64,000 nucleotides of DNA. Origin: Monocercomonoides exilis PA203 (Eukaryota; Protista; Preaxostyla). Location of the stretch: NCBI GenBank assembly GCA_001643675.2, contig LSRY02000015.1, positions 1,054,001-1,118,000 on the forward strand. The letters are read 5' to 3'. Below are positions 3,326 to 38,617 of the stretch, piece after piece. The position numbers and the translations under genes were made by a program. The notes below the pieces were generated by a model, which was given only the letters and a program-made list of their open reading frames with translations, did no database searches and had not been told where the DNA came from. How positions within the stretch are numbered: position 1 is the stretch's first letter; each line of letters starts with the position of its first letter.

Positions 3326-6300
3326 TCACATTGATCCAATCATTGACTGCCTCCGTAGAATTGAATTTGGTCTGTTTGGTCTTAGTAGCAAAGCAAGCGC
3401 TTGGTCGTCACGAGTAAAATGGTTTTGCAGAAGCATAGTTATCTGCTTCTTCCCAATAATTGTCGTCTCACGCTTTTTCGCCTTGATGATATCGCCCAGC
3501 ACTGTCAGCCTCTGCCTGATGATCAGATGCTGCCGAGTGTGATAGTTTCTCACAGCCAACAGAATTGAGACAGGAACATTCGCAGACTCGAATGCATTAG
3601 GTGTAGGCGTCATGACTGATGGCGACACAACACTGTTGACATCTTCAAAGGGGGATTTGCACGCGTCTTCGGAGAATGCGTCACCTGTCAGCACAGACGG
3701 AGTGATGGGCGAATAATGCGGCTGAGAGGCACGTCTGATTGCAGAATTCATAGCGCGCTCTTCGCGCTGGAACGCTTCCAGAATCTTCGCCATCAGCGCT
3801 TCGTACAACGACACAATCGTGGCTGTCGACGATCTCCAGTTCAGAGACTCAAACAGGTTCTGAACAATCTCCATCACTTCCCGCCTCCGCTCGTCCAACG
3901 CAGGGAAATCAGTCGTCATTGCCTTTGTGAATGAAGTCTCGACTTTTTCTTCGTCTTCTTCTGGAAGCATCAGCATCAGACTGTTGGTGATCTTCGTCTT
4001 GTTCCGAAACGAACGATACAGAAATGTGAGCAAACAAGAATCAAGAATGATGATGCACAGCACAATCCCAACAGAAACCAGTATGACAACGTTCTGTGCA
4101 GATTTTATCTGTTCAGCAGCTGCAGCCACAAGATAATTGCTGATATTGTCCATCCCTTCCAGCAGGTCATAGCGTACAGCAGACACAACAAACGGGTAGA
4201 TCGGGTTCTGTGCTGTGATGGTTGACAGCTCGCAGTGCGAAAGAGTCTGGATTTGTGTGCAGAGGCGAGTGTATATCATCATCAGAGAAGGCGGCGCAAG
4301 CTCGCTGTATCTGTACAATCGCGTGGTGAGATCCAGACTTGAGCATGTTTCCTTGTTCTGCACAAAGCACTCCTTGTTGTGCAGCAGCGCCTCGCCATTC
4401 ACTGCTGTCGGTGCCCTCGTGTTTGGCAGGTTGTCGATGATAAAGTCAGACGTCTTTGCTGCATCGTGATTTCCAAAGTGGATCTGCCTGTGCATCCGGT
4501 TCAGATACGAGTTCAGCTTAAACATGATCGTGGCCAGCACTTTTCTGTCGGTGCACATGTGGTCAGTGCTGTTCCATGCGGGGTTTGTGGAGTATGCATA
4601 CTCCATCCGGTTTGGAATATCAATGGAAGCATCATTTGTCACAATGCGCATCATAATCACCTGGATCATCACCAGAACAGAAGGGCGGAGTCCAGAAACA
4701 ATCAGCATTGCGATGTAGTCCTTGAAGGCGATGGTCAGCTGAGCAACGACTTCTATTGCAGCCACTGTACAAAGATAGTTGAACACGAAGATGCTCAGCA
4801 TCATGATGATGTCGACGACTGAGAAGTCTGCTGGAAAGTGTTTGAAGCCATCCTCCATCTTGTCCAGATCGGTGAACAGCTGCTGCTCCCACTCGTCGTC
4901 TGCAACGGTGCGTCTCAGAAACCCACGTGGCTGTTCATGTTCTTCATCGTTTTCATTCAAATCTCTCAAAAGCGGTGGTAACTTTTTGTTGAGCGCTGAA
5001 AGCGCAGAAAGATCAGGGAATTTTGAGCCACTGGAGAAAGATGCATTTGACATCAAAGGAAAAACTGGAGGAAAAGAAGCAGTGGATGATGAATTGGATG
5101 AAGAAGATGATGATGAAGAGAAAGAGGAAGAAGTTGCTTGGAAGCAATCTGCATTTGCTCCTGTGTTTGTGTTTGATTGAGGTGAATATGGTGTGGAGAA
5201 GGAAGAAGAGCGGCACTGCAGCACCATCGCCTGCGAGCTGCGCATAGGTGAAATGGAAGAAGAAGGGATTTGCTGCGCTGAAAGCGGCTGCTGCGGATTC
5301 TCAGCAGAAACATTGTTTTTCAGCGGCGAAGGCATCCTCACGCGCGGCGACTGTGCCTGAAACTGCAGCATGGAAAGAGAAGTGGACGGCGGCAGAAGCG
5401 GCTGAGATGCCTGCGACTGCAGCTGAGGCCGTGGGGAAGGAAACTGCGCAGAGGAGCCGAAAAGAGAGGGCTCTCTTTGGATCAGCAGCGGATTCATCGA
5501 GTCAGACGGGTTGAGCGACGCTGCATCGTCGAGTCTCGTGTCAGCATATTCGTATTCTTTGCCGCGAGGCTCAAAGCAATCAGCGTCTTCTTCATCAAAC
5601 TGGCCTTCGATTCCTTCGCTCTTCTTGTGGTTCATTCCAGTGATGACGAGGCGCAGCTGTTCTTGCACCTGCTGCTTTGTCATTGAGTACAGTTTTGCAT
5701 AAGTCGACTTCCGCTGCGAGATAATGTCGTACATAATCACAATAGAGAAAATTAGGTAGATGATGCTCAGGAGATTCACCACGTTGGACAGAACCACCGA
5801 ATATGAGGTGATAATCCTATCGTTTGCATCAGAGGTGGACTGATACATCGCAAACAGGATTTTCTTCCCCCCTTCCACAGCTGACTGGAATGTGTTGCAC
5901 ATCAAAAACATAATGTTCGTGTGGAAGTCCGGGTTCGTTTCAGGCGAGTCCGAAGAGCCAATCAACCTCGCTTTCTGCACAAGAATAGCCAGAAGATCCA
6001 TCATCGACGTGGGCTTGTGCACTTGTGTGACTGTTGATGCGCGTAATGTGTGTGAATTTGAAGTGGAGTATGAAGTGGATGAGTTGTTTTCAGAAAAATC
6101 AGATGCTGATGAATTCGTTGGAGGAAAAGAAGATAATGATGAAGATGAAGACGAAAATGAAGATAAATTATCAGAAGATGTTGAAGGACATAAACTTGTA
6201 TTACTTACAGTCAAATCCTCATCCGATTTCACAGCATCGTCTGAGCCAATCATATTCCCACCGCCATACTCATTTATTGTGCTTGTAACTGTCGAAAAGT

Positions 6301-9082: not shown

Positions 9083-9399
9083 GTGCTAACGACTTGCTTG
9101 CTATCATCTATGAAAGTAATAGGATAAAACGTTGGGACTAATGAATAATAATGTATACTCTGATCTTTTTTGATATTTTTATTCAATATCAAACTCGTTC
9201 AAAATATTTCAAATCTGCATCATTGATTCAATTGAACGAAAATGGATCCTTTGAAGGTTGATCATAATTCGCTCAATTAGAACAAAATATTTTGTTTCCG
9301 ATTTTTGTTCCACGCATTCAAAATGCCTATAACTTATATTTCAAATAAAACTATTACCCTTCACCAAATTTTTATTTCACTTTTTCATTAAATTCTTCA

Positions 9400-12300
9400 T
9401 ATTTATTATTCACAAAAAAAAAATTGCAAGCTTTCCTGGGAAACAAAACCTGGATCCAAGGCCTTCAAGTTTTTTTGCATTTTTCAACAAAAAAACAGGA
9501 CGGGTTTAGTCTTGTCTACGTTCTTAGTAATTAACCAACTCATTGGATAAGCAAAAGCAACAATTTATTTTTTATTCTTTAGAGATATTTTACAATTACA
9601 TAATTCATTTAAAAATCTTCTTCCATTGACATTGAATTCAGCATGCCTTCATTTCCCATTTCCGTTATTTCAACATTGATGCTTTTATTAGTGAAATTGC
9701 TATCAAGCGTCATTGAAAAACTATTTTCCTGATTCACATGACTTTGATAATTATTTGATAAAGAATTTTCACAAAAAGTATTACAAAAATTCGAATTTAA
9801 GAAACACACCTTTGACATTCCTGCGTATCTTTCATATGTATTTATTTGATTCACACAACTATCATTTTCAGTATTATCATTGTCAATACAAGTTTTTTCG
9901 CTGTTAAAAAAAATTCAATATTTTCAACCTATTATCAATTCCTTTTCGAACATTTTTTCCAAATCTTCCTTTTTTTGTGTCTTCTTTTTCTTTCTCTTTA
10001 TTTCTATTATCGTCAAATAATTTTCTTTTTTCATTGTCTTTTCTCATATTTATTTTGTAAGTTATTTCAATCATGCCTGCATTCAAATTGCTGCTTAATG
10101 GTGATCCCATCAATTTTCCATTATTTTTCCTGATAATTAAAAAACTTTTCATGTTTTTAACAACAAGCTCACCCCAGCTAATTTCCGGTAACTCTTGAAG
10201 CCTGATGAATAGTAACATACACAATAAATAAAGAAAGAAATGAAGAAAGAAAGAGAAAGAAAAAGAAAGAGAAATAAATGAAGAGAGAAATAAAAACTGA
10301 GAGAAATAAAAATTGAAATAAATAAAAAGAATAAAATTTTTAGACACACAGTAAAAAATAAAGTTTTGTTTGTGTTTTTTTCGTTTTCAAAAATTCTGTC
10401 GAAGCAGATGACGATGAATTAGAAGATGCAGATGCTAATTCAGATATGATATTATTTGAAATATAAATTGAAGAATTATTATTTACATTAATTAAATATG
10501 AATAACAATTAAAACAGAAAAAATCAATCAAATCAAAAATATTGTTTATTATTTTAATATCCAAATTATTATTAATTAAATTCGTTAAAAAACCAAATTC
10601 ACTGTCGTAGTCGTTTTTGCCATGGTGTTCAGCAAAAAATGAAAGTGAACAATGTTTATTTTTTAAAAGAAAAGAATTATCAGAAAATAATAAATATCAA
10701 ATTCTTGAATTACTAAAATGCGGTCCATTGTCGCAAAAAACGAAAAGAATCAACATTAATAAAAATATCAAATTATAATAATTAATAAATACATTCACAA
10801 ACAAAACGATAATCGTATGATAATATTTCAGAAAAATAATTAGAACAACACTTTTTTTAAATACCAAAATTATCAACATAAAAAACAACAAAACACAAAT
10901 GAGAAATTTGTTTCTTGGAAAAAAAGCTCCTCCCAGTTTCATAATTTGAAATGGACACCCATCAGTTTTCCTTAAAATCCATAAGGATTATTTCTTCGTT
11001 TTTTTTCAATTAATTTTTCATAATATGAAAAAACTCTCTCTGTTAAGTTGCCATTTTCTTGTGTTCTTTAATCAACTGCATTTCTTTATTTTCATTCTCT
11101 CTCAATTTTTTCCCGTTTCTTTTTTATTCTCTCTCTTTATTTTCTAAATATTCTCCTTTCATACACACCTCGCAAAGATCTTTTCTTTTCTTTGCTTTTT
11201 CAATATTTCTCTTTTTCTAACATAATGAAGAATATGATATTTTTTGCTTCAATTTCTTTTTTCATATCATCATAAAGTTGCTTTTTCGTTTTTTCAATTA
11301 TTCTTTTTTTATTTTCTGAAAATTGCTTTTTCTTTTCATATCCTTTCATTTCTTTTTTACAAGTTTTTTCGTTATTTTCAAGACGATTTTATTGATGATG
11401 GCTGATGATTTGATGAATAGAGTCATTATTTTCAATATTATCTTTATTTTTGTCAAATATTTTTTCTTTTATCTTTTTTTTCAACAAATAATTCGTTTCA
11501 ATTATCGAAGAAGAATTTAATTGTTGGTCTGTCTCATGTGATGTGTAAATTTCTTCAATATTTTGATTGATGTGGTTGTGTGTGATGTTTGGCATAAGCG
11601 AAGTTGTCAAGCATGTGAGATCTGCATCAACTGCTCAATCAACACAAGCAGGGCTTTCTGCCAAATGATTAAATGAAGTCTGAGGATCGATGGAAGTTGA
11701 TAGTGCTTTTTCTCTTTTTGCCAAGAATGTTTTTAATAAAAGTGAAAATTTTTTAAACATATGTTAATAAATATTTTATTGAATTATTTCACAATGTTAT
11801 TGACATATATGCATAATGATAAAAAACTGAATGCGTTTATTCCTTCTTCTTCTGTTCTTGCAACTTGATGAACTGTGGCACAACAGCCAGCTTTCAATAC
11901 TTTCATGTTGTTCATCTGCTTTTTGAAGAGAAACATTTTCTTAATCAAACATTTGTTTCAAGTCATCTTTTGGCAAAAAAAAAACTTTGCATGCCTTTTT
12001 TGCTGAAGCTTTCCTTATGGTTTTGTTGGATATCAGGGAAGATTTGTTGTTTGCTTTTCTCGCGAGAGTTTTAATACTCCCCGCGAGTCAGGACGAAGCC
12101 GTGGCTTGTCAGTTCGCCAAAAGAAAAATCCAAAGAAAGTGATCCCAATTAGCTGATTTTCTCTTTGCAATTCCAAGAGTTGTGCCGCACAGCTAACTTT
12201 TTAAGAGTGCTTTGGATTTTCTCTAAATTTAAAATCAATTCATTGGAATATACATAAATATTAATAGAAAAAAATAAAAGAAAGAAATAAAAATTAAAAA

Positions 12301-24089: not shown

Positions 24090-27000
24090 CTACGCCTGGG
24101 CCATCTGCTCCACCTGTGCAATCACATTCTTCTTTTCTGTCTCAATCACCCCGACCATCTGTGTTCGCGCAGACTCTGTCTCGGCCCTCTTCCACTTCTC
24201 CACCGTCGCTCCGCACACCCTCCCTTTCTTCCCCACCCTCTTCCACGAGTCCTCGATGTAGTTCACCTTCGCATCCAGCCACCCCACCTCGTCTGAGTGC
24301 CGCTGCCCCAGCCCCTGCGCCTGCACCGCCAGATCCTCCCGCTTCCCGCTCATCACTTTCTCCACCTCCCCCATCTGCTCCACCAGCCCTTCCATCGCAT
24401 CGTCCATCTCGTGCTTCCCTTTCTCCTCTGCTGCAACCAGCCCGTCCCGCTGCGTGTTCAGGATGCTGTTCAGCGCTTCCTCCACCTCCGACACGACTGC
24501 CCACACCGAGTCCACCACGTTGTTCATCACCGACTCCGCCACCTCGCACACATGCTTCTCCTTCGTCGCCTGCCACGACGACACAAGCGGCTCAAACGAC
24601 GCCACATAATTCGAGATCTCGTTGCACGACGTGCTGTGCTCCGCAATCTTCTCTGCTCTCTGCGTGCTCGCTGCCTCCGCATTCCCGATCCTCTCAAAGC
24701 ATTCCTCTCTCTTCCCGTCTTCTGCCGTCAGCCGCTCTTCCCTCTCGGCCCTCTCCTCCACAAGCTCTCCCAGAATCGCTGCTGCGTCTGTCGACATCTC
24801 CACCATCGCATCCACACGCAGCCCAGTGTCTGTCCTCCCCTGTGTGCTCAGCTGCGACACTGCCAGCGCCTCTGCCTCTGCTGCCTTTTCTGCCACTTCC
24901 TTCTCTGCCGCATCCAGACGAGCTGTGCCGTTTGCCGCCACTGTCCTTCCTCTCGCTGCTCTCTGCGCCGACGCCCCTTCTCTCTTCTCTGCTCCTTCCT
25001 TCATCACCTGAATAAGCCCCTTCTCCATCTCGCTGAACAGCTCCTCCTCAAACGACACCACACGGTCCTGCACATTCACCACCTCGCTCACCAGCCGCCT
25101 CTCTTCTTCAATCGCCCTCTTCACTGCCTCCGAGCTCGCCCGCACCTCTGACACTGCCGTGCTGTCCTCCTTCTCTGCCTGTCCATCCTCGCTCTCTGCC
25201 TCCCCCACTCTCACCTCCACCTCCTTCACACGCGGCAGGATGTTCTCCATCTTCTCCTCCAGCGCACGCAGCCTCTCGATCGACTCCACCACCCTCGTCT
25301 GGATGCGCTTCACTCCTTCCTCCGACTCCTGCAGCGCCGTGGACGTCGACTCCAGCGTTGTCGTCAGGTGCTCCGCATGCGCCTCGTGCGACTCTTCCAT
25401 CTCCTCAAACCGCGCCACCAGATCGTCTCCAATCATCACATCCCGCACCTCTGTCCCATCGTCTTCGAAGTGCGTTGATGATGACGATGACGATGCAGAA
25501 GCTGAGGAGGATGCTGATGCTGATGAGGCTGATGATGCTTCGTCTGTCACTTTCTCTCTCGCAACAACTGCAAAGTTGTCTTTCAGCGCCTTCATCTCCT
25601 TCTCGTATCCTGCCACCATCTCTTCTGTCGTCTTCAGCCACCCTTCCACTTTCTCTTCCCCAGCCTTCGAGCTTTCCTCTTTCCCTTTCTCAAATTCTCT
25701 CTCTATTTCTGTCCTCTCTCCATTCAGCTGCTCAAGCTGCGCATCCCTCTTCACCTTCTCTCCATTCATCTCTTCTTCTCTTTGCTTCCGCGCTGCCTCC
25801 AGCCACTCTCTCGTCTGCCCAATCAGCTCATCAAACGCCTTTTGCTCTTCTTCCCGCCTCGCTTTGTCTTCTGCTTCCGCATCCGCCGCTGCCTTCATCC
25901 GAGGCTCCATCCACGAGCTCATCTTCTCCAATAGCCCTGCCTCGTTCTTCTTTCTGTGCTCTTCCCCAGACTCTGTCTTCGCAATCAGATCCTTCAGCAG
26001 ATGGATCCTGTTCTCGTCCGTCACCCCTTGCTTCTCCCACAGCCCATTCAGATGCCCGCTCTCTATCGACAGCTTCTCCCGCATCTCCCCCGTGATGTGC
26101 TGCACATCCTTCTCAATCGTCCCGCGGTGCTTCTCATTCGACCCCAGCTGCCGCTCAAACGCATCCTGGTCTTGGTCGCTCCGCGTGCTCGCTCTGTTCA
26201 CCCGATCGCACACAACTGTCAGCTTGTGGATCTCTTGCATCACTTTCCCAATCTCTGTGTCTGCCATAGACCCCGAGTCGTCCTCCATCATCTCCTCTTC
26301 CGAGTCTTCGTCTTCTCTCAGCTCTCCTTTCCCCTTCGCATTCGCATTCGCATTCGCCATCGATGCAGTCGATGCCGATGTCGAAAGCGTCGTCAGCTTG
26401 CTCTTGCGCTTTGTCTGTCTTCGCGACTGCGCCTTCTCAATCTCCCCCAGCTCATACTGCCTCAGCGCATCCTCTTCCTCTTCCCACTCATCCAGCAGCC
26501 GCTTCTGCACCTCATCCTCTTCATCGCCCTTCCCCCTGCGCCTTCTTCTCCTCGCTCCGTTTCCTTCGTCTGCCTTGCCGTATTTGCCCACACGCGCAAT
26601 GTGCGACAGACGCGATGCTCTGGATGGCGATCGGTTCTCCTCCAGCTCATTCATCGCCTGCTGCTCGTCCTCTCCATTGCTCGTCGATCCTTCTTTCTTC
26701 TCTTCTCCTTCTGCTCTCAAGTGCCTCGACTCCATTCTTCGCTCTCTTGCTCGTGCTCGCTCCTTCTCCATTTCTGCCTCCTTCTCCTTCTTCTCCTTCT
26801 CCTCATCTTTTCTCACATCAAACGTCGGCCGAGAAACACCCCCCAGAACCATCGCACCACCCGTGGACAAGATCCACAAATTGTGGAAAATCGACGCATT
26901 CTGCCTGATCGCGGCTGCATATGGATCTTTTCCCTCTTTTCCCTCTTCTCCCTCTTCTCCTTCCATCGACACATACGTCCCATCCAGCCCCTTCCTCTTG

Positions 27001-29908
27001 TCTCTTCTCTGTGTCCCAGCAAGTGATGTCCTTCCGCTCTTCATCGTGCTGCTCATTCCAAACCGGCTTCTTCCACTCACTCCGCTTTCCTCTCTTGCTG
27101 CACTCGTCGGTGTGCGCGGAGCTGCCCCACCGCTCTTCTTCTCAGCCGATGCAACTCCTCTTCTGTTTGATCGCACTGAAGAAGCTGAGGAAGAAGCGTT
27201 TGTTCCAGTTTTGCCTTGATATCCGAATCTGTTTGGTGCTTGGTTGGTTCGGGCTGAAGAAACTGCAGATGAAGGACCATTCGATGGAGAACTCGAAGGA
27301 CGCATCGGTGTTGACAACGATGTCGATGCTGTCTTCAATGCCAGCGGAGGGACTGTTGGTGCAGTCTGCTCTTGTTCTCCTTCTTTTCCTTCTGTTTTCT
27401 CCTCTCCCTCTGAAAGTGCTTCAGGAGATGATTCTGCAGATTCACCTTCTTTCAGTGATTCTGGCAGTGCTTGTGCATTTTCCACTGACTGCTCTGTTGG
27501 TTCAGCTGCTTCTCCATTTCCTGCACACCTTGCACTTTCTACTGTGTCCTGACTCTCTTCCTTCCAGTTCTCACTTTCATTGCCACATTCCTCCTGCATT
27601 GGATGTTGTTGCTGTTCTTGTTCGTTTTGTTCCTCTTCTCCTTTCATCTCTCCTTCTTCATTGGTCATTTGCTCTGCTTCATTTCCCTCGCTAAATCCTC
27701 TTTGTGAGAAATCACTGCTGAGTGCTATCATTCCTTGGCCTGCTCCACCCCACACCAGCATTCTCTGTGCATCTGCAATGAAAATTGCAAAATGGCCAAA
27801 CCGAGGTCGAGGCACAAACACATCCAGCGCTGCTCCTGGAGACGAGGAAGGTGAAGGCGAGGACATTGACGATGTTCCATAGCCACCAGCTCCGCTTCTT
27901 CTCAAAGACATCGTGGTTGCCCCCATCATCGACGATGGTGTTTGTGAAGGTGATCCCATTGTACCTCTTGTTCCTCTGTTCAGACGTGGCTGAGAAGGTG
28001 TTGGCTGCGGTGTGCGCTGCAGCTGAGCTGAACCTGAAACTGAAGAAGAGCCAACAGCGCGGCCTTTCTTCATTGTGGATAAGCCAGTCGCTCCACGTGC
28101 TTGTGAGGAGGATGCAGTTGTAGAAGATAAAGATGTTGTCGTGCGGTTCAAAGATGTGTTGCGACTTCTGGTTGTTCCATTCATTGAAGAAGAAGAAGAA
28201 GAAGTCGATGTTTTCATTCTCTTTGAAGAGTCAGTTGTCACAGCATCGCCCTTAGCAGCGTATGGATCTACTTCTAATAAGACGAAGTTGTCTGTCTCTG
28301 TGTTGTATTCCCACGTGTCGTTGAAGCAGCGTTTTTCGTTCCGCCCGCCAAACACAACGATTGAGCCGTCTAAAAGAGCAGCTGTGTGGAAAGCACGGGG
28401 CGCAGGGAGCTCGTGATGAGGGAAGGAATGGAGAGGGGTTGGGGTGTTTTCTGAAGAAGAAGAAGAGGATGATGATGGTGAAGTGCGGGAAGAAGAAGAT
28501 GATGATGATGATGAAGGTGAAGAAGTACTTTGCTCTCCAAACATTTCCTTTTCTCTTTCAGAGCCCAGCGGAAGCGCCTCGTCCTGCCCCATCAGCCCTG
28601 CATTGAGCTCAGCCTCTTTCCTCCGCTCTTCCTCTTCTTCGATCTCCTCTCTCGTTTTTGTAACCTTTTTTGGCTCAGCTGCCTCTTCTCCAACGAGCAT
28701 CTTCCATTCCATCTCAACCAAGTCAAACATCCACACGTCGTTGAAGAACTTCTGCCCATCAGTTCCTCCAATCAAATACAGCTTGCCTTTCAGATGAGTC
28801 ATGGTGTGCCCGTAACGTGCAGGTGGGACGAGCGCAGAAGAAGAAGAAGAAGAAGAAGAAGCAGAGCGAGAATCTGAAGTGGAGGAAGTGTCATTCGATT
28901 TATCAACTGGCTTCATTTCTTTCCATTCAAATGTGTTCACATCAAATGAATGCAAATCGTTGAAGAGTGTTTTTTGGCTGAAACAAAAAAGGTTGTTTTA
29001 TGGTCATTATAGTATATCAAAGAAAAACGAAAACAATAAAAAAAATCTTCAAAATTCATTTCAAACCCATTTTCATCATTTCCTTCTCCGCCGAAAACAA
29101 TAATTTTTGTACCAACTCTTGTGGCACTGTGAAATGCACGCGGCAAAGGAACATTGTCAAGACCAGTTACAGGAACCCATGATTCTGTTTCCTATTAATA
29201 TCAAAAAAAATATTTGTTATGATTTTTCAATAAATGTTGAAATCATACAATTCCAAATATCCACATAGTATTGGTGTATGTTTGTCCCGTTTTCCCTCTG
29301 AAGTTTTGAATTAGAACAGAATTTATGTGTTTAAAAAAATAAAAGCAAACCCGAATATAATCATGTCACGTTTGAAAGAAACAGCTGTATGGCCAGCACA
29401 AGGTGGTGGAATAGGAGCTTTTGCATTAACTTTATTCCAATTTTTTAGCACTTTTGAATCGAGAAAATTGAATATGAATCAGAAAAAAAAGATCTTAAAA
29501 TTTGCAAACTTAGATTGTAAAACCAAATGTCATTTAGACATTTCTCCCCTGCAACTCCACCAAAAACTATAAAAATAGGACCGCAAGCCACACACGAAAA
29601 GTGAATTCTAAATGGAGGCTTGGGACCGTTGATTAGCTCTTTTGACCATCCTGATTGATCAATCGCTTTAATATCCAAAAATCATTCGACGTTGTCAATT
29701 AAAAATATACATAACAGTATATTTATAAAAATAAAAGAAAGCAAAAAAGAACAAACAAGCATCTTCAATCGGTTCTTCGTCTTCACTAAAATTTATTTTT
29801 TTGGTAATCATAAATTAAAATCAGCAAACAAAAAATAATCAATTCCACTTAGATAAAATAATTTATTAAAAATGACAACTTTTGAAATGCTTGGTTTTCT
29901 GATGCCAT
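24090..29908 (-). CDS. Kelch-repeat protein with Ser-rich linker and long C-terminal coiled coil (Tea1/Kel1-like architecture), multi-exon
   Basis: ATG 29908 (MASENQAFQ), short GT-AG introns, final exon 28977-24090. Kelch units: PPFRIHFS..FGG..NDIW, PPPCAGHTA..IFGG, PRAFHSA..FGG, PARYGHT..IGG..NDVW, PRAFHTA..FGG..NDTW, PRPRFGH..WGG. Confidence 0.88.
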
Positions 29909-30309
29909 GCCTCAAGAAGACGATTGAAAATCGATAAAAATAACCATAAATTATAATTCTTGATCAAAATTATGAAGTGATTATGAATAATAATATCAAA
30001 TTAGTTTTGTTCAAATGATTCGTGATATCATAATTTTTTCATTCAACTAAAAAATAAGAAAAAAATATTTGTGAAATATTTCTTGGAATAAAAATAAATG
30101 ATTCTAATGAAAATTTTTTCTTCTTTTAAACTTAATTTTCACACTTTTTTCTGCATCAATTTCATTTCAATCAATATTCTTATTGTTGTTTTGTTTTCAG
30201 AAATATGAAAGATTTACAATATCATCGATCTCTTTCCTCTAACAAAAAATTTCTATCATTTGCATAAATTTAATTTATTCTTTTTGAAAGAAGGGATTGC
30301 ATTATTCGC
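29909..30309. promoter_or_regulatory. Probable bidirectional promoter (~400 bp)
   Basis: AT-rich interval between divergent ATGs at 29908 (-) and 30310 (+). Confidence 0.45.
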
Positions 30310-33300
30310 ATGGATGTAGCTGAAACGGAGAATCCATTTAAATCTCCTGATTTTATAAAATACTTTTTTTGCTTTGGATTTCCAGGTCGGTAGAATTGTT
30401 TTAATGTTAAAAAATGCATTTAAATATTATATTTTTCAAAGGATTTATTGTATTTGTGTTTTGCATGATAATTTTGTCGATAGGCAATTTTAATTTCTCA
30501 GCAATTTCTCCTTTGTTTGCTGCAACAAGATGTGGTTATTTTTTATGTGTCAGAGGAAAACGAGCAAAATTTTGGGCAGCAATATGGTCAACAATATTTT
30601 TTGTCCTGCTAGGGATTGGTGTTATTCTCATTATTCTTTGGGGCGTCTTTGTGTGCTTGCATCATCCTTTTTTCTTTTTTATATATCTGTTGAAAATTAG
30701 AGCATGATTTTTCTACAGCCAGCAAGAATAGGATTGTCTGTAATTTTAATAGCTTGTGCTGGGTTATGTTTTGTATATGGGATTTGTCGTTGGACTGCAG
30801 TTAACTGGAGTTTTTCATTGACAATTATAATTTCTTTCGCGTTGTGTGTGCTATTTCTCATGGCAACATTCATTGTCGGAGTATTTCTTACAAAGCCATT
30901 CTCTCACGTCGCACTTTCTTGGCTGTTTTTATTGTGGAGTGGGATGGTTTCTTCATTCATTGTGTTTTTCCTGGCGCCTTCTCCTTCAGTTGCACCAAGT
31001 GAATATTTGAATGGTAAAGCACACATCACTCCTGATGAATCATCTCTCAAATTGTTCAAAAACAGATCGCGTGCAAAGAAGTTGTTCATGTCATTCGGTT
31101 TTTACTGCGTGTCATTGATATTTCTATTGCTGTACGGATTTCTTTTCCACTTTCTGAATGAAAAATCGTACGTTGGCATATATCATGTTGTATTTATTTT
31201 TGCAGTTGACTTGTTGTCTGGATGGGTAGCTGCAACATCCAAAATAATCCCTCCGCTCGCATTGTCGCTTATGCTGGTAATCATGCGGATATTGATCACG
31301 ATCTTTGGAGAGAAGTATTGGTTTGCAGGGCATTCCGTTGCATTTCTTGTGTTTGCGTTTCTGTTCTCTTGTCTGTCTGTCCTGACGATGGTGAGACATG
31401 GGAAGGAGAAGCAGAGGAAGATCATCAGGGAAGTGATTGAGATGATCAGAAAGGAGAAAAGCGAAGCTGAAAATGGAATGAAGTTGAACAATAAGAATAC
31501 GAAGAGGGAAGAAAATAATGTTGAAGCAAATGAATCAAATGCCCCTTCTTCTTCTTATTCAAGCAATCCCTCTGAAAGTGCTTCAGAAGCATCAGAAGCA
31601 TCTTCAAAACAGCCAATATCTCTTCCACCACCACCTCCTCCTCCACGTCATCATCATCAACAACCTTCATCATCATCATCATCATCTTCTTCTTCTTCTT
31701 CTTCTTCTTCACCTTCATCATCATCCACTGATAATCTGACAAGCCAGCTGATTGCGATGTTTATGAAGCACAACACAATCACTGTTGTGCTTTTCCTTCT
31801 CTTTCTCGTTGAAACCATCTTGGTTTTCTCTTTCGCTTCTCTTGAGCCAATTCACTATGATTTCTTCACAAAATCCGATTTCACTGAAAATTCTGAAAAA
31901 AATGAAGAAAACAGAGAAAACTTTATTTTGCCGCAGGAAGAGATGGGAATAGCGATGATTTGGATTGGAGTTGTGCTTGTTTTGTTTATCGCGGCTTTTC
32001 GGTTTCTGATGAGAGACGATTGGCACTTTGCGAAAAAGGTATGTTTTTTCGTGCTTTTTTTGGGAGTTGTGAATGGAATGATTGGATTTTTATTTTTCTT
32101 TGCTTGTGAAAAAGAACAAAATTTTTGATATTTTTGATATTTTTTTGAAAAAAAGTTGTTGATTTATGAAAAACAACTTTTCTTTTTTTCTTTCTTTTCT
32201 GTTTTTCTTTTTATTTTCATTAATTTTTCCCTTTGGTTATTTGAACATTTCATTCTCTGCTCTTATTCAATTAGACAACCGTTTTATTCGCTTGTGGCTT
32301 CCTTCTTTTGGAAGGCTTCGGAATTTATGTCATTCTTCGCTGGAAAATTGTTGGATTAGCTCTTCTCTTCTTCTTTATGCCTCTCTCTCTCCTTCTTTTT
32401 GTCTGTCTTCTTGTTTCTTTGCAGAGGAACGGATATGGTTTGTTGCATTGCTCTTTTATTTGAAGTTATTTAATGGTCATCATCATCATCATCATCATGA
32501 TTATTCTTTTTATTCTTAATATTTTTGATATTAATACTTTATGTTTTAACTTAATTTCATTTTTTCTCATTCATCTTTTTTTTTTTAAATCTCTTTCCTT
32601 TCTTTCAGTCTTCGTCTCCTTCCCTCTCTCTCTCCAGCACACCTCCTTTTTCAATCGCTTCCTCTCCTTCTTCCGCCGAAAAGCCACATCTTCCTCGTAT
32701 CTCTCTCTCTTCCTCTCCTTTCTTGTGATTCTCTGCCTTGTCGCATATTCCATTCTCTCCGTCCTCTTCTCCACGCCCATCGTCGGCCTCTCCATCTCCT
32801 TCGTGCTCGTTTTTCTTTTCCTATTCATCCTCTGCGCTTTCATCTACTTCAACACATTCCACTTCCTTTCCACCCCTTCTCTCTTCCTCCTCTTCTTCTG
32901 CATGGTCGTCGAAATCATCGTCTTCCTCGCTTTGCTCATGACAGGCACACTCACCGCGGAGAAACTCAGCGACGCTAATTTCTCCGTCGCCCTCATTCTT
33001 GTTCTCCTTCTTCCTTCTCTTTTGCTCCTCGTTGCCTCTGCCTATGAATACACCACCTCCCACTTCTGCCTCACTGCCTCTTCAATCGGCTTGTTTGTCT
33101 TTGCGATTCTTCTGTTTGTTTTGTTGGGGGCTCTTTTGCTGGTTGGGCTGAGACAGGCTGTGTACGGCACAGCTGTGCTGGCTGCAGCAGTGTTTGTGAT
33201 GCTCGGAACATTTATTGTGCACAGGTGGATTCAGAATAAGTTCAGGGCGAGTAAAGTTTGTGGAGAGTTAATTTTTATCTTTTTTTTTTTATTGTTCTTT

Positions 33301-36300
33301 GTACTTTGTTCTTTGTCTTTGAAAATGGAATTATTGGAGTTTATTTCTAATTTTTATTTTTCTTTCATTTCTCTTATTTTTATTTCTCATTATATTTTTA
33401 TGTTCATTGCATTCAACCCTCTAATCTTTTCCCATTCCTCCCCTCGTCTCTTAAAAAAAATCCTTCCCCCTTCCCCCCTCTCAGCTAATCGCCGTCTTGT
33501 TTGTTCTTGTTGCATTGATTGGAGTGGGTGTAGGTGTTGGCATCAGCTACATCCAGGGCTCCTATTTTATGTGCTTCACTGTCATTTTGGCTGTCATTGG
33601 AGTCTCTTGTGGACTATCTGCACTCTCAAGCATCATCAAATACGCATCGTGTGCTTATGTGTTGTATTGGCTTTGTTTAATTTCCTTTTTTTTCCCTTTC
33701 CTTTCCTTTCTTTCTATTTTAAACTTCTTTCTTTCTTTTGAATTATTCATCCTTTTGTTTTTATTCATTAACTCCTCTATTTTATTAATATTATAATCTT
33801 TCTTTTTTTCTCCTTCTTTCTCTCTAATTAATTTTTCATTTCTTTCTTTCTTTCTTTCTTCCCCCTCCCTCTCTCTTTCTCCGCTCTCCTTCCCCAAACT
33901 CTTCAGCGAAGACTACTCCTTCATCTTCTCTCCAACCATCTTCCCTGTCTTCACCTTCAACCCTTCCCTTTCCTCCCTCATTTCCGTCTCCACCTCTTTC
34001 CTCTTCCTCTTCATCGCTTTTCTCTGCATCACCCTCTGGGGCATCATTGCCTCTCTTTTCTTTTCTCCCAGTTACATTGGCATTGGCGTGGCTTCTATGT
34101 CTCTTTTGTTCATTGTCAATCTGATCTTCACGTTCATTCGATATTCGTTTGTGTCCTTTGCAAACGATGTGAGGGCTGTTGGAGATGAAGATGTTAGTGA
34201 TTTGATTAAAAAAGTATGTGCATTTAAAAGAATTTACGGATTTATTCATTTTCTTCTTCTTCTTCTTCTTCTTTCTTGAACATGTTTTATTTTTATCTTT
34301 TATTCATTTTCTTAAAATGCCACATTTTATTTATTTATTTATTGATAATTATTCGCTTTATTCATCATTATTTTTCTTCTTCTTATTTATCAGGCTGAGC
34401 AATCTGAACTCTGCCGTTTTTTCTCCAAAGACATCACGTTGCCTTCTTTTGTATTAAGCGAAAAAGAAAAGAAAGAAATGAAGAAGTCGATGAAACGAAT
34501 GAAAGAGCAAGTTATGGGAGCATCACCAGAAATAACAACTGAGAGAAAAGAAATTGGAAGTGAAGGGGAAATAAAGAAGAAGGAGAAAGAGAAAGAGAAA
34601 GAAAAGGAGGAAGATAAAGATAAAGAGAAAGAGAAAGAGAAAGAGAATGAAAAAGAAAAAGAAATGTCAAAATCGACAAAAGATACAAAAGAATCCAAAG
34701 AGAATAATGAAAAATATGAAGATAATTCCGCAGTTGACACATTCACCAATTTTGTCACTTTGAAGAGAACACAATTGAGAGATTTTCTTTTAGGTGACTT
34801 TGAAAATGAAGCTAAAAATGAAGGGAAAGCAAAAAATGAATTCAGAAATGAAGCAGAAATAGAAGCCAAGCAAGTTTCAGTGAAAGAAGACAGAAGCGTT
34901 CATTGGGATTCACACAAAGAAGTGAAAGAACAGCTGAATTGGATTAAAAAACAGATGAAGAAGCTGAAATTCTTTCCAAAAGATGAAGAAAGCAAAGAAA
35001 ATGGTAAAAGCGTCGAGAATTCGAAGGATAGCAAAGAAAGTTCTTCATCCGAAACAAGAAATGAAGAGCCTCATTCATCATCATCTTCTTCTTCTTCTTC
35101 AACTTCTTCTTCTTCAACTTCTTCTTCTTCTTCTTCTCCTTCACCATCCTCTTCTTCTTCCTATTATGACAACCCGCTCCACATCTTTCTCCCTCTCTCT
35201 TATCCTTCTCTTTCATACGCCTATCTCAAAATGGACGACGCCTTCAACTCCCACAAAATAGACGAAATTCGCGTTTTATCTCTTTTCCAGTTTTTGTTAA
35301 GGGAAAAAGGTGCTGGAATCCAGCAGCACGACAATCAAGTTCTAATGTTTTTATTTAGGAAGTTTCTCCGAGAGAAAGATCAGCCAGAGAATGACATGAG
35401 TCTTATTAAATTGTGCAGCGAAGAGGAAAGAAAAGAGATTGCATCACATAAAGCAGAATATGAAGAATACGAAAGAAGGCAGTTTGCAGCGAATGAGAAG
35501 GAAAAATTGGAAGAAGAAGAAGCAGAAAGGAAAAGGAAAGAGAATTTGGAGAGGTACAAAGCAGAAGAAGCGAGGCGAAAGAAGGAAAAAATTGAACAGG
35601 AAAGGCTTAAACAAGAAAAGCTTAAACAGGAAGAAGAAAACAAGCGAAAAAAAGATGAACAACCACAAGTGGCACAAAAGGAAAGCATTGCAACACCAGA
35701 AATCAATGAAAACAATGCCAATGAAGAGAAACCTGATCAAACTTCTGATGCTTCTTCAATAGAAAACAACAAACAAACTGAAAAAATCGAAGAAAAAAAG
35801 AAAACTGAAAATATTGATAAATTAATTCCATTTGTGGATGAAGAGTTTCCGGCAGATATGTCGATGGTGTATTATTCGTCAAATGAAGCACAAAATTCGT
35901 TTGGGGTAGAAGGGTTTGTGAGGCTGTCGAAACTTCTGATGGAAATGCCTCTTGTGGAAGACGGGGTGGTTGTGTCAATGCCACAAACAGAGAATTCTGA
36001 GAAGGAGAATGAAAAGAGACAAAACACATTGAATGAAGAGAATAATAACGCAACTTCTGAAGATAATTCCAGTTCATCATCAACAGCATCTTCTTCCCTC
36101 TCTTCTTCCTCTTCCTCTGTCTGTCTCTACCATCACAAGCCCAACCACACCACCGTCAAACAAGGGCGCCTGGGCGATTGCTGGCTCATTTCAGCGTTGG
36201 CTGTCGTGGCGCAAAGAGAAGGAATGATTGAGAAGGTTTTTGAGCCAACATTCACTGAACTTTCTGAAAATGACCGGAAAAGCGGGAAATTCGCCTTGAG

Positions 36301-37843
36301 GCTGTTTTTGGACTCGACGGAGCCAGAAACAGTTATCTTGGACGATTTCGTACCCTTTTCGCACCTGAAGCTGCTGAGAGACGGAGAAACTAACAGCAGC
36401 AGCAGCGGAGGCGAGAGCAGAAATTCCCCTCTTCAGTCTATTTCTCCGTTCCCAACATTTGCGTACTCGAGCAGCCGCGGAGAAATGTGGGTGTCGCTCA
36501 TTGAGAAAGCGTTTGCGAAGACGCTGCTTTGCTACGAGGCGCTTTCAGGTGGCTCGACACACACAGGAATATCAACACTGACAGGAGGGTTTCCTGAGAG
36601 GATATCCCTGATTGAGACGATGGAGTGTGCAGCTGATGAAGGAAAGGGAGAAGGAGAAGCAGATGCGATGAAATATGCTGCTGCTTCTTCTGTTTTTTCT
36701 GCTTCATCATCATCTTCTTCTTATTCTTCAACGTCAATTTCAAAACGAATTGTGAGAAAGAAGCAGAAGATGAATGCAAACAAAGTGTGGAACATGCTTT
36801 CTGACTTCTACGCAAATGGATATCTTCTCAGCTGTGGCTCATCTCGAACCATAACATCATCATCTTCCTCTTCTTCCTCTTCTTCATCTTCTTCCTCTTC
36901 TTCCTCTTCTTCCTCCTCCTCCACATTCATCAGCGGCAGTGAAGCGATCACTGAAGAAGGCATCGTCCAAGGCCATGCGTATGCTCTTCTTCGTGTCCAG
37001 AGCGAGTTTGGGCAGCGTCTGCTTCTCCTTCAGAATCCGTGGGGAACAGCGCTGTGGAAAGGAGACTGGAGTTCTCAATCTCCTCTGTGGGCACCTAAAT
37101 ATCGAAGCAAGTTTGGCGAGGCAGACGAGAAAAAGGGGTTGTTTTTCATGTCTGTGGAGGATTTTGTGGGGAATTTTGATTATCTGTACATTTGCAAGAT
37201 CATTCCGGATAGCTGGAAGAAGAATGTGTTCCAGGGAAGTTGGAGCAATTGCAATACGATTGGCTTTGATGGCATTCATTTGCATCCTTCTTCGCCTCAA
37301 AAAGTGCTTCTGGTTGCGAGAGAGACGAAATGCTGCTTCAGACTCATACAGCACACACCAACCCCTCTTCTTGACTCTATTTCTTCTTCTTCTTCTTCTT
37401 CTTCTTCTTCTTCTTCTTCTTCTTCTTCCTCCTCCTCCTCCTCCTCCTCACATTCAACCTCTCCTCCTCTTGATGAAGAGCTTCACATTGGATTCACTCT
37501 GATGAAGACGAACGGAATTCGTGCCCAAAACGTTATCAGATCGCGTTGTGTTGTTTATCCGTCGACTTTGAAGAAGGACAACACAGTGGAGATTGAAGTG
37601 ACACTTGAAAAGGGGAAATATACGATTGTTCCTATTGTTGCTGAAAGTGTATATGAGAAAAGAATGAAAAGGGGGGCAATAAGTGAAAATTGTGATAAAA
37701 GTAATGGTAATAGGAATAGCAATTGTATTAATAATAATAATAACAGTAGTGGCAATGATACCTCCAATGATATTCATGAAACTCCTTTCACATTTTTGAT
37801 CTATTCAAATCTGACTGTAAAATTGATTGATGTGAAGGAATGA
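30310..37843 (+). CDS. DEK1: DEK1-like multipass transmembrane calpain (TML-CysPc-C2L), ~2111 aa, 8 exons
   Basis: Exons 30310-30385, 30442-30650, 30719-32038, 32275-32437, 32609-33255, 33485-33648, 33907-34213, 34394-37843; all introns GT-AG and phase-compatible (6336 nt). ~23 TM segments; catalytic QGRLGDCW, GHAY, QNPWG; C2L domain (FQGSW...PQ...GKYTIVP). Confidence 0.82.
37381..37450 (+). repeat. (TCT/TCC)n microsatellite encoding poly-Ser in the calpain C2L domain
   Basis: About 23 consecutive Ser codons, in frame. Confidence 0.9.
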
Positions 37844-38239: not shown

Positions 38240-38617
38240 ATGAGCGGAACGTTAATAGATTTTGATTGGAAGATATCGGTTTGCAATAAATTACGAATAC
38301 GCACATATCTTAACCTTGCATTCTTTTTCACTGTTTTTCACATTTTATTTCTTTTATCATTCATCAAGACAACACTGGCAACAGATTCAATGTCACAGCA
38401 ATACACGCCCACAATGCTTTTGACATTATATTACAATGATGAAGAGATGCATAAACGGGAAGCTTATTTTGAATTTTCACCAAATCAATTACATGAATTT
38501 ATTGAAAAACTTCACACCGTTCAAGATGTATGCTTTCAAATAAAAATTTTCTCTGTAATCTAATCTTTTTATTTTCTGTTTTTTCTTTAGACCGTTAGGA
38601 AAGTTGTTCCGCAATGA
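38240..38617 (+). CDS. COMM-domain protein (COMMD6-like, 74 aa, 3 exons)
   Basis: Exons 38240-38278, 38369-38527, 38591-38617 give MSGTLIDFDWKIS-TTLATDS...PTMLLTL...FEFSPNQLHEFIEKLHTVQD-TVRKVVPQ*; contains the COMM signature LxDFDW..P..FE. Confidence 0.85.

What the first reader, a model, noticed from the sequence alone, without database searches (positions are those of the whole stretch)
30310..37843. DEK1-type giant transmembrane calpain hidden across eight exons
Seen: seven phase-compatible GT-AG introns join several hydrophobic ORF fragments and the calpain ORF into one 2111-aa protein. It has ~23 TM segments interrupted by a hydrophilic loop, a charged linker, CysPc with an intact Cys/His/Asn triad, and C2L. 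The exon 33907-34213, mostly absent from the ORF track, encodes FSPTIFPVFTFN...VSTSFLFLF...LWGIIASLFFSPSYIGIGV. This lines up without gaps with the last TM block of plant DEK1 as I recall it (YSPRVLPVYVYD...VSAAFLVLY...GWGVVASL..YPPFAGAAV). Established: TML-CysPc-C2L calpains are best known as land-plant DEK1 (similar size and TM number, tied to mechanosensitive Ca2+ signalling) with few protist examples. Inference: a true DEK1 orthologue in a probable oxymonad supports an ancient membrane-sensor/protease system. The plant laminin-G linker domain seems to be replaced here by a Lys/Glu-rich coiled coil.
Basis: partly seen in the sequence, partly recalled or inferred. Interest (0 to 1): 0.85.

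Follow-up and report, generated by a model that had tools for sequence, protein, structure and literature searches.

The report
Membrane-anchored DEK1-type calpain of an oxymonad
This is a real, spliced and transcribed eight-exon gene of the oxymonad Monocercomonoides exilis. It encodes a roughly 2117-residue calpain protease fused to a 23-helix membrane domain of the same family as plant DEK1, which makes it a sound but unsurprising new member of a family already known from many protists.

Summary
RNA contigs from four runs of one study show six of the seven proposed GT..AG introns. One contig runs from the transmembrane exons across the 34213/34394 junction into the calpain exon. Hydropathy gives 23 peaks, nine before a hydrophilic loop and fourteen after it.

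A plant-only DEK1 membrane profile hits exon 7 at 28.5 bits and exon 3 at 15.7 bits, well above shuffles. hhalign against a streptophyte-only alignment gives 93% and 91% probability at colinear positions, and the exon 7 block aligns over 62 gapless columns. The Cys/His/Asn triad is intact. A fold model matches whole m-calpain across CysPc and C2L.

The genome is M. exilis PA203.

TML calpains have been proposed as ancestral since 2012 and are known in Trichomonas. Blattamonas and Paratrimastix homologues are already named as such. The laminin-G-like domain is streptophyte-specific, so here it is absent, not replaced. A second paralogue lies on contig 15.

Verdict: new member of a known kind.

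The parts
30310..30385 (+). Exon 1: start codon and the first half of TM1 (76 nt, ends in phase 1)
   Evidence: This is the first ATG after an in-frame stop. The donor is cag|GTCGGT. No RNA contig was laid on it. The N-terminus of the paralogue on contig 15 (MD...HFLHFGLAG) resembles it (MD...YFFCFGFPG).
30442..30650 (+). Exon 2: rest of TM1 and TM2, with the conserved WG motif
   Evidence: RNA contigs cover 30440-30650 and join to 30701. Hydropathy gives 2 peaks. It is 40% identical to the paralogue. The exon 2/3 junction reads like the continuous Blattamonas sequence.
30701..32038 (+). Exon 3: TM3-TM9, hydrophilic loop (31397-31756), TM10-TM11
   Evidence: RNA contigs cover it. Scores are 15.7 bits against a plant-only MEM HMM (shuffle maximum 0.0), hhalign probability 90.8, E 1.2e-6 against streptophyte MEM columns 95-331, and BLASTP E 7e-27 to Blattamonas P0001 residues 20-282.
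32275..32437 (+). Exon 4: TM12-TM13, ending in the conserved R-x-N-G-Y motif
   Evidence: Both flanking joints appear in all four RNA runs. By eye, its end ...LQRNGY matches Blattamonas ...LRMNGY and plant ...W(M/I)RNG(Y/H). MAFFT misplaced this short exon, so the match is not machine-scored.
32609..33255 (+). Exon 5: TM14-TM19
   Evidence: RNA contigs cover it. BLASTP gives E 3e-14 to P0001 residues 446-636. phmmer hits plant DEK1 at about 815-975. hhalign is weak but colinear: probability 36, E 3.8e-4, columns 824-979. The plant-only HMM gives 2.9 bits, which is not above shuffles.
33485..33648 (+). Exon 6: TM20-TM21
   Evidence: Both flanking joints appear in the RNA contigs. Hydropathy gives 2 peaks. 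There is a weak colinear match to the paralogue. It has no significant match of its own outside the genome.
33907..34213 (+). Exon 7: conserved SPxxFPV block, the last two TM helices with the WG..AS motif, and the start of the linker
   Evidence: Scores are 28.5 bits against the plant-only MEM HMM (shuffle maximum 5.2) and hhalign probability 93.4, E 2.4e-7 over 62 gapless columns, 1039-1100. It is 36% identical to P0001 residues 696-794. The 34213/34394 joint is seen in 3 of 4 runs.
34394..36142 (+). Exon 8, first part: cytosolic linker rich in Glu, Lys and Ser, without a laminin-G-like domain
   Evidence: The frame is open from the acceptor onwards. Over the first 525 residues the composition is E 17.7%, K 14.7% and S 12.2%, and the plant linker HMM gives no hit. 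A stretch of about 190-215 residues is conserved with the paralogue at 40% identity and weakly with Blattamonas.
36143..37210 (+). Exon 8, CysPc protease core, with Cys 36179-36181, His 36974-36976 and Asn 37034-37036
   Evidence: Pfam Peptidase_C2 scores E 6.2e-52. Cys, His and Asn fall in invariant columns of a 30-sequence alignment, and the codons were checked. PDB calpain cores match at E down to 8e-28.
37214..37843 (+). Exon 8, C2L (calpain-type beta-sandwich) domain and the TGA stop
   Evidence: Pfam Calpain_III is below its threshold (E 0.29). A local C2L HMM, built from an alignment that contains this sequence itself, gives 128.5 bits, so that score is not independent. The AF2 model has confident beta strands here, and Foldseek aligns whole m-calpain over 600-625 columns (3bow_A, E 9e-21). 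It also finds the calpain-7 C2-like domain 2qfe at E 8e-4.

Best explanation
This is an expressed, eight-exon gene of Monocercomonoides exilis for a membrane-anchored calpain of the TML family, with the 'Type 2' layout MEM-Linker-CysPc-C2L that plant DEK1 also has.

Shown here:
- About 23 membrane helices form a MEM domain homologous to that of DEK1, split 9 + 14 by a hydrophilic loop.
- A charged, low-complexity linker of about 580 residues follows.
- The protein ends in a papain-like calpain core with an intact Cys/His/Asn triad and a C2-like beta-sandwich.

Inferred from plant DEK1 and from calpains in general, not tested here:
- The membrane domain anchors the protease at a membrane and probably couples it to a membrane or Ca2+ signal.
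- The linker and protease face the cytosol.
- Activation gives limited proteolysis of cytosolic substrates, possibly after autolytic release of CysPc-C2L.

The gene was inherited vertically within Preaxostyla. It was duplicated in the Monocercomonoides lineage after the split from Blattamonas.
For: Gene structure and transcription: six GT..AG joints are seen in RNA contigs of four runs, and one contig links the TM exons to the calpain exon. All phases fit.

MEM homology:
- phmmer places exons 3, 5 and 7 colinearly on plant DEK1 at about 221-407, 815-975 and 1039-1102.
- The plant-only HMM gives 28.5 and 15.7 bits against shuffle maxima of 5.2 and 0.0.
- hhalign gives 93.4% and 90.8% probability.
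- 21 of the 22 most conserved MEM positions covered by these exons keep the consensus residue.

Protease: Peptidase_C2 scores E 6e-52, the triad is invariant, and the fold matches m-calpain CysPc plus domain III.

Family coupling: 60 of the 71 long proteins found with the MEM profile carry CysPc.

Lineage:
- In the CysPc tree this gene groups with the contig-15 paralogue at 100/97, then with Blattamonas at 99/97, then with Paratrimastix at 90/83. It is split 100/100 from the five other M. exilis calpains placed on the tree, none of which has a MEM domain.
- MEM occurs at only two loci in the genome.

Functional analogy: DEK1 has 23 TM helices plus a loop, and its CysPc-C2L is the effector part. 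A mechanosensitive Ca2+ channel activity depends on DEK1 (PMC5647327, from its title; I did not read the paper).
Against: Nothing here tests function, topology, Ca2+ dependence, localisation or autolysis.
- Intron 1 and the start codon lack RNA support.
- Exons 2, 4 and 6 have no significant match of their own to DEK1.
- Exon 5 is only weakly similar to plant DEK1.
- Pfam Calpain_III is below threshold.
- The AF2 model of the protease part has a mean pLDDT of only 65.8, because of four or five Ser/Asn-rich inserts.
- The RNA evidence is one study of assembled contigs, so it gives neither levels nor transcript ends.
Confidence: 0.9

Rival explanations
1. There are two adjacent genes: a polytopic membrane protein (30310-34213) and a separate soluble calpain (the ORF from about 34439). 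On this view they look joined only because assembled RNA contigs can bridge neighbouring or read-through transcripts.
For: The tool itself warns that a contig across two genes shows no single transcript. The calpain ORF is long and open on its own, and an ORF finder reports it from a TTG at 34439.
Against: The 34213/34394 joint is a canonical GTATGT..CAG intron that keeps the frame. Reading through that intron unspliced meets a stop after 21 codons. Blattamonas, Paratrimastix, plants and 60 of 71 long MEM-bearing proteins carry MEM and CysPc in one chain, in the same order. The paralogue on contig 15 has the same order. No ATG start lies close to the acceptor.
Confidence: 0.03
2. It is a membrane-anchored calpain-like protein whose main role is not proteolysis, for example a scaffold or a channel-associated subunit. 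On this view the MEM domain itself is the functional unit (transport or ion conduction) and the calpain part is regulatory or vestigial.
For: The review reports that some membrane-anchored calpains of types 1, 3 and 4 lack active-site residues, and that permease, mechanosensitive-channel or MFS-like motifs have been predicted in MEM. The MEM model is a large, confident helical bundle (pLDDT 85.3) with invariant buried Asp and Arg residues.
Against: Cys, His and Asn are all intact here, as in all Type 2 members. The CysPc core is the best conserved part of the protein. The MEM model matches no solved transporter or channel (Foldseek best E 0.046, VIA best Z 9.9 at rmsd 15.7). Nothing therefore supports a transport fold.
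Confidence: 0.07

Closest known systems
[quoted passage not shown]
   Same: The domain order and overall size are the same (about 2117 aa against about 2150 aa). Both have about 23 TM helices interrupted by one hydrophilic loop. The MEM domains are homologous and colinear, sharing the motifs WG, R..L..FG..YW..GH, SPxxFPV and WG..AS. Both have an intact triad and a C2L domain.
   Different: There is no laminin-G-like domain in the linker. The loop is about 120 residues against about 284. MEM identity is only about 20-34% in the alignable blocks. The protease and C2L carry Ser/Asn-rich low-complexity inserts. There are two paralogues instead of a single gene. The CysPc tree does not place it specifically with plant DEK1.
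Blattamonas nauphoetae 'Calpain-type cysteine protease' (P0001, 1711 aa) and Paratrimastix pyriformis 'putative Calpain-type cysteine protease ADL1' (P0009, 2123 aa)
   Same: These are the nearest relatives and share the architecture. Exons 3, 5 and 7 and the calpain part match P0001 colinearly. In the CysPc tree they form a Preaxostyla clade with this gene.
   Different: Identity is only 25-36%. The Blattamonas model starts at the equivalent of this gene's TM2. The M. exilis gene was duplicated after the split from Blattamonas.
Trichomonas vaginalis TML calpains (Type 1, MEM-Linker-CysPc)
   Same: They are membrane-anchored calpains with 22-23 TM helices from another metamonad.
   Different: The Trichomonas paralogues all lack C2L, which has been read as a single loss. 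The M. exilis protein keeps C2L. I did not compare the sequences directly.
Classical animal calpains (m-calpain large subunit, PDB 3bow, 1kfu)
   Same: The CysPc and C2L folds and the catalytic triad are shared.
   Different: The animal enzymes have no membrane domain. They carry a penta-EF-hand domain and a small subunit, which are absent here.

Membership tests
Calpain (peptidase family C2, CysPc) | Peptidase_C2 domain above Pfam's gathering score | tested here: met
   PF00648 scores E 6.2e-52, 176.9 bits, against a cut-off of 23.8. PDB calpain cores match at E down to 8e-28.
Calpain (peptidase family C2, CysPc) | Catalytic Cys, His and Asn present | tested here: met
   They fall in invariant columns C67, H332 and N352 of alignment A5. 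The codons are TGC 36179, CAT 36974 and AAT 37034.
TML / membrane-anchored calpain, Type 2 (DEK1 type: MEM-Linker-CysPc-C2L) | Long N-terminal transmembrane domain (more than 15 TM segments) on the same polypeptide as CysPc | tested here: met
   Hydropathy gives 23 peaks in exons 2-7. In-frame spliced joints lead up to the calpain exon.
TML / membrane-anchored calpain, Type 2 (DEK1 type: MEM-Linker-CysPc-C2L) | MEM domain homologous in sequence to DEK1 MEM, not merely hydrophobic | tested here: met
   The plant-only HMM gives exon 7 28.5 bits and exon 3 15.7 bits, against shuffle maxima of 5.2 and 0.0. hhalign gives 93.4% and 90.8% probability. Exon 5 is colinear but weak. 21 of 22 conserved positions are kept.
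TML / membrane-anchored calpain, Type 2 (DEK1 type: MEM-Linker-CysPc-C2L) | C-terminal C2L / CBSW domain after CysPc | tested here: met
   The test is by fold. Foldseek aligns m-calpain over 600-625 columns and finds the calpain-7 C2-like domain at E 8e-4. Pfam Calpain_III alone is below threshold (E 0.29).
TML / membrane-anchored calpain, Type 2 (DEK1 type: MEM-Linker-CysPc-C2L) | CysPc groups with other TML calpains and not with soluble calpains | tested here: inconclusive
   It groups with the Preaxostyla TML calpains (99/97 and 90/83) and is split 100/100 from the five other M. exilis calpains placed on the tree, which lack MEM. The backbone is unresolved, however, and insect and Guillardia calpains fall among the TML rows.
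Streptophyte DEK1 in the strict sense (one-to-one orthologue) | Laminin-G-like (LGL) domain in the linker | tested here: not met
   The plant linker HMM gives no hit, and none of the four other protist linkers scores above its shuffles. [quoted passage not shown]
Streptophyte DEK1 in the strict sense (one-to-one orthologue) | Single-copy gene and specific sister relation to plant DEK1 | tested here: not met
   There are two MEM-calpain loci in the genome. The tree places this gene with Preaxostyla and not with plants.
Streptophyte DEK1 in the strict sense (one-to-one orthologue) | Mechanosensitive Ca2+ signalling, autolytic release, developmental role | not testable with these tools
   These need electrophysiology, biochemistry and genetics.

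The most novel reading that the evidence does not exclude
Preaxostyla keep the full ancestral TML-CysPc-C2L layout, whereas the only metamonad examples in the two calpain papers read here (Trichomonas) have lost C2L. M. exilis carries two diverged copies. The MEM domain, modelled with high confidence from the Blattamonas homologue, is a helical bundle of about 22 helices plus a small beta sheet formed by the conserved SPxxFPV block, and it has no detectable analogue among solved structures. If so, a wall-less, amitochondriate flagellate would offer a plant-independent system for asking what the DEK1 membrane domain senses.
Probability: 0.5. Interest if true: 0.4.

Novelty: new member of a known kind. 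Interest (0 to 1): 0.3.

Why it matters
DEK1 is essential for plant development. Its membrane domain is structurally unsolved and functionally obscure, and the review of these proteins asks for non-plant models.

This gene shows that an oxymonad has the complete DEK1-type layout in two copies, transcribed and spliced. That fits the earlier inference that the C2L-containing form is ancestral and that Trichomonas lost C2L.

It does not change the picture of an ancient origin, which was already drawn from Trichomonas, Thecamonas, ciliates and plants. Relatives in Blattamonas, Paratrimastix, Andalucia and Anaeramoeba are already named as calpains in public records.

Its practical value is a verified gene model for M. 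exilis, plus a confident MEM model for the family.

Tried and rejected
- Word-based protein search with the Blattamonas MEM region found only the query itself. The region is too divergent for shared 5-mers, so this says nothing about absence.
- The first calpain search was swamped by low-complexity words and gave 5 hits among 8000 candidates.
- No search returned an M. exilis protein for this locus. I cannot say whether the published annotation holds a model, because looking one up by exact sequence would need the joined protein, which I did not build.
- MAFFT misplaced the short exons 2, 4 and 6 when I added them as fragments (alignment A3). I left them out of the profile (alignment A4).
- Exons 2, 4 and 6 gave no significant match of their own to Blattamonas or to plants.
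- The plant linker/LGL profile found nothing in this linker, nor in four other protist linkers.
- I searched for a solved analogue of the MEM fold with Foldseek (best E 0.046) and with VIA-align over 48,161 chains (best Z 9.9 at rmsd 15.7, a generic helical match). Neither is meaningful. The model has 800 residues, so a single-domain match could have been missed.
- Two 'joints' at 35000/35630 and 35527/36104 are non-canonical, have sides of 20-22 letters and lie in Lys/Glu and Ser repeats. I read them as repeat artefacts, not introns.
- The earlier notes of this scan near this locus concern unrelated features.
- I considered and rejected the two-gene reading and the pseudogene reading. There are no stops or frameshifts in 6354 nt, and conserved residues are kept.
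Full report
**What is in the sequence**

Between 30310 and 37843 the + strand carries a run of hydrophobic open-frame pieces, followed by one long ORF. Pfam finds a calpain core in that ORF (Peptidase_C2, E 6.2e-52) and a sub-threshold Calpain_III match (E 0.29). It finds nothing significant in the hydrophobic pieces. Coding pieces have 32-50% G+C and the gaps between them 20-30%.

**Is it one spliced gene?**

One study with four RNA runs holds 60-72% of the sampled words of this stretch. Their assembled contigs, laid on 30250-36200, match without a single differing letter. They carry six GT..AG joints, five in all four runs and 34213/34394 in three:
- 30650/30701
- 32036/32273 (cut +2)
- 32436/32608 (cut +1)
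- 33255/33485
- 33648/33907
- 34213/34394

Read against the sequence, the introns are 30651-30700, 32039-32274, 32438-32608, 33256-33484, 33649-33906 and 34214-34393. Their donors are GTGTGC, GTATGT, GTTTGT, GTTTGT, GTGTGC and GTATGT, and all acceptors are AG.

The contig of depth 14.4 in run X1 is 1838 nt long and begins at 31729. Joints of the same depth carry on to 174 letters beyond 34394. The TM exons and the calpain exon therefore sit on one assembled RNA.

All phases fit. Reading through four of these six introns meets a stop (introns 2 and 5 stay open), as does reading through the unconfirmed intron 1.

The first intron (30386-30441) has no RNA support. Contigs stop at its acceptor, and one has 11 unmatched letters beyond it. 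The N-terminus of the paralogue (MD...HFLHFGLAG) resembles exon 1 (MD...YFFCFGFPG).

My model has eight exons and 6354 nt, or 2117 codons.

Every search and count was done exon by exon, and residue totals are arithmetic only.

**Organism**

The window is contig 9 of an assembly of 82,301,135 bases in 101 contigs. These are exactly the figures in Table 1 of the Monocercomonoides exilis PA203 Nanopore assembly paper (PMC8767320).

**Membrane domain**

A Kyte-Doolittle scan gives 23 non-overlapping peaks: 2 in exon 2, 9 in exon 3, 2 in exon 4, 6 in exon 5, 2 in exon 6 and 2 in exon 7. The count is stable for thresholds of 1.4-1.8. Nine peaks precede a loop of about 120 residues rich in Lys, Glu, Ser and Pro (31397-31756), and fourteen follow it. 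DEK1 is described as having 23 spans with a central loop.

Homology, not just hydrophobicity, was tested in four ways:
1. phmmer with single exons against 124 fetched proteins hits plant DEK1 colinearly. Exon 3 falls at about 221-407, exon 5 at about 815-975 and exon 7 at about 1039-1102.
2. An HMM built from 31 plant DEK1 sequences alone scores exon 7 at 28.5 bits and exon 3 at 15.7 bits. The maxima for 200 shuffles of each are 5.2 and 0.0. Exon 5, at 2.9 bits, is not above its shuffles.
3. hhalign against a streptophyte-only alignment gives 93.4% probability (E 2.4e-7) for exon 7 and 90.8% (E 1.2e-6) for exon 3. Exon 5 is weak at 36% (E 3.8e-4) but lies at the expected place.
4. Across 28-29 diverse MEM domains, 27 positions are at least 75% conserved. 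These exons cover 22 of them and keep the consensus residue at 21, including the invariant Asp, Arg and Pro.

**Nearest relatives**

The best hit of the calpain part is the Blattamonas nauphoetae 'Calpain-type cysteine protease' (1711 aa). Exons 3, 5 and 7 match its N-terminal region in order, at E 7e-27, 3e-14 and 2e-14.

The Blattamonas calpain domain in turn finds Paratrimastix 'putative Calpain-type cysteine protease ADL1' and then some hundred plant DEK1/ADL1 proteins.

**Protease part**

Cys, His and Asn fall in invariant columns of a 30-sequence alignment. I checked the codons.

An AF2 model of the last 620 residues has a mean pLDDT of 65.8. The folded blocks reach 80-97, and four or five Ser/Asn-rich inserts fall below 50. 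Foldseek aligns it with whole m-calpain large subunits over 600-625 columns (3bow_A, E 9e-21). It also matches the C2-like domain of calpain-7 (E 8e-4). C2L is therefore present.

**Linker**

The linker is E/K/S-rich. A profile of the plant linker, which includes the laminin-G-like domain, finds nothing in it, nor in the linkers of four other protist TML calpains. The review states that LGL is what sets streptophyte DEK1 apart from other Type 2 calpains. The domain is absent here, not replaced. I did not test for a coiled coil.

**How large is the family?**

A profile of eight MEM domains plus exons 3, 5 and 7 was searched against 1.84 billion representatives. It finds 1156 proteins at E <= 0.001 and 145 at E <= 1e-30. 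Of the 71 listed hits of at least 1300 aa, 60 carry CysPc and 35 carry C2L by local profiles.

Named examples are Thecamonas, Andalucia ('Calpain-type cysteine protease ADL1'), Gefionella, Anaeramoeba and Spirogloea.

The literature already holds the main inference:
- Zhao et al. 2012 proposed TML-CysPc-C2L as one of four ancestral architectures. They found it in Excavata, and all seven Trichomonas paralogues lacked C2L.
- The 2023 review sorts 54 non-plant members into four types.
- No paper in the library pairs Monocercomonoides with calpain in a relevant way.

**Within the genome**

Pfam's calpain model hits eight loci. The MEM profile hits only two: this one and C15:1221561-1225803. The second has the same exon order and is 29-40% identical in most matched blocks.

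In a CysPc tree (IQ-TREE, 78 rows) the two group at 100/97, then with Blattamonas at 99/97, then with Paratrimastix at 90/83. Five of the other six M. exilis calpains were placed on the tree, and they are split off at 100/100. The backbone is unresolved. Insect and Guillardia calpains fall among the TML rows, and this gene is not specifically sister to plants.

This fits vertical descent with a late duplication. It does not fit one-to-one orthology with DEK1.

**Fold of the membrane domain, by proxy**

The exons could not be joined, so I folded Blattamonas residues 1-800 with a 31-row alignment that includes these exons. The model has pLDDT 85.3 and pTM 0.84. It shows about 22 long helices and a small beta sheet at 698-720, which is the SPxxFPV block of exon 7.

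Neither Foldseek (best E 0.046) nor an exhaustive VIA-align run (best Z 9.9 at rmsd 15.7) finds a meaningful solved analogue. This is a property of the family and is transferred to this protein by inference.

**Mechanism**

The following is shown: a membrane domain, a linker and an intact calpain on one transcript. The following is inferred from DEK1 and from calpains generally: the protease faces the cytosol, is activated by a membrane or Ca2+ signal, and carries out limited proteolysis, perhaps after autolytic release.

**Surroundings**

Upstream on the - strand lies a Kelch-repeat gene (24090 to about 29680). Downstream on the + strand lies a COMM-domain ORF (38240-38563).

**Verdict**

This is a new member of a known kind, with interest 0.3.

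Noticed in passing
L002 1-10000 (G000:C15:1221000-1230999), + strand: This is a second TML calpain gene in the same genome, with the same exon order. Its matched blocks are exon 2-like 274-477, exon 3-like 562-2100, exon 4-like 2314-2469, exon 7-like 4538-4834, linker 7307-7951 and CysPc 8338-9984. Most matched blocks are 29-40% identical to the window's gene. Its C2L runs off the fetched stretch.
   Followed up: partly
G000: C6:689787-690731, C11:1609028-1610020, C36:1380385-1381595, C20:504906-505904, C6:1594861-1595976, C24:158792-160246: There are six further calpain loci in the genome. None has a MEM match in the fetched 10-kb stretches, which reach about 6-8 kb upstream of each, or in the whole-genome MEM search. 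The five placed on the CysPc tree (C24 was left out) form two groups far from the TML pair.
   Followed up: partly
window 24090-29680, - strand: A large Kelch-repeat gene lies head to head with the calpain gene. Its main ORF is 1621 aa, with further Kelch-like exon pieces up to about 29680. That leaves about 630 bases of 23-29% G+C between the two starts.
   Followed up: partly
window 38240-38563, + strand: A short ORF with a COMM domain (E 5.9e-8) lies just downstream of the calpain stop. It is probably part of a spliced gene.
   Followed up: no
P0001 residues 698-720, equivalent to window 33920-33990 in exon 7: In the AF2 model of the Blattamonas MEM domain, the most conserved block of the family (SPxxFPV...) forms a three-stranded beta sheet and not a membrane helix.
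   Followed up: no
window 36500-37700 (exon 8): Long Ser runs and an Asn-rich stretch interrupt the CysPc and C2L domains at four or five places (model residues 129-167, 228-253, 292-319, 461-499 and 557-596, all with pLDDT under 50). They are in frame and are not removed in the RNA contigs as far as these were laid.
   Followed up: partly
P0006 (Cuscuta campestris, 2364 aa): A plant record carries three DEK1-type CysPc cores in tandem and hardly any membrane domain. This is probably a mis-modelled or rearranged DEK1 locus.
   Followed up: no
window 30250-36200: No protein search returned a Monocercomonoides protein for this locus, although the genome has a published annotation of 18,152 models.
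   Followed up: partly
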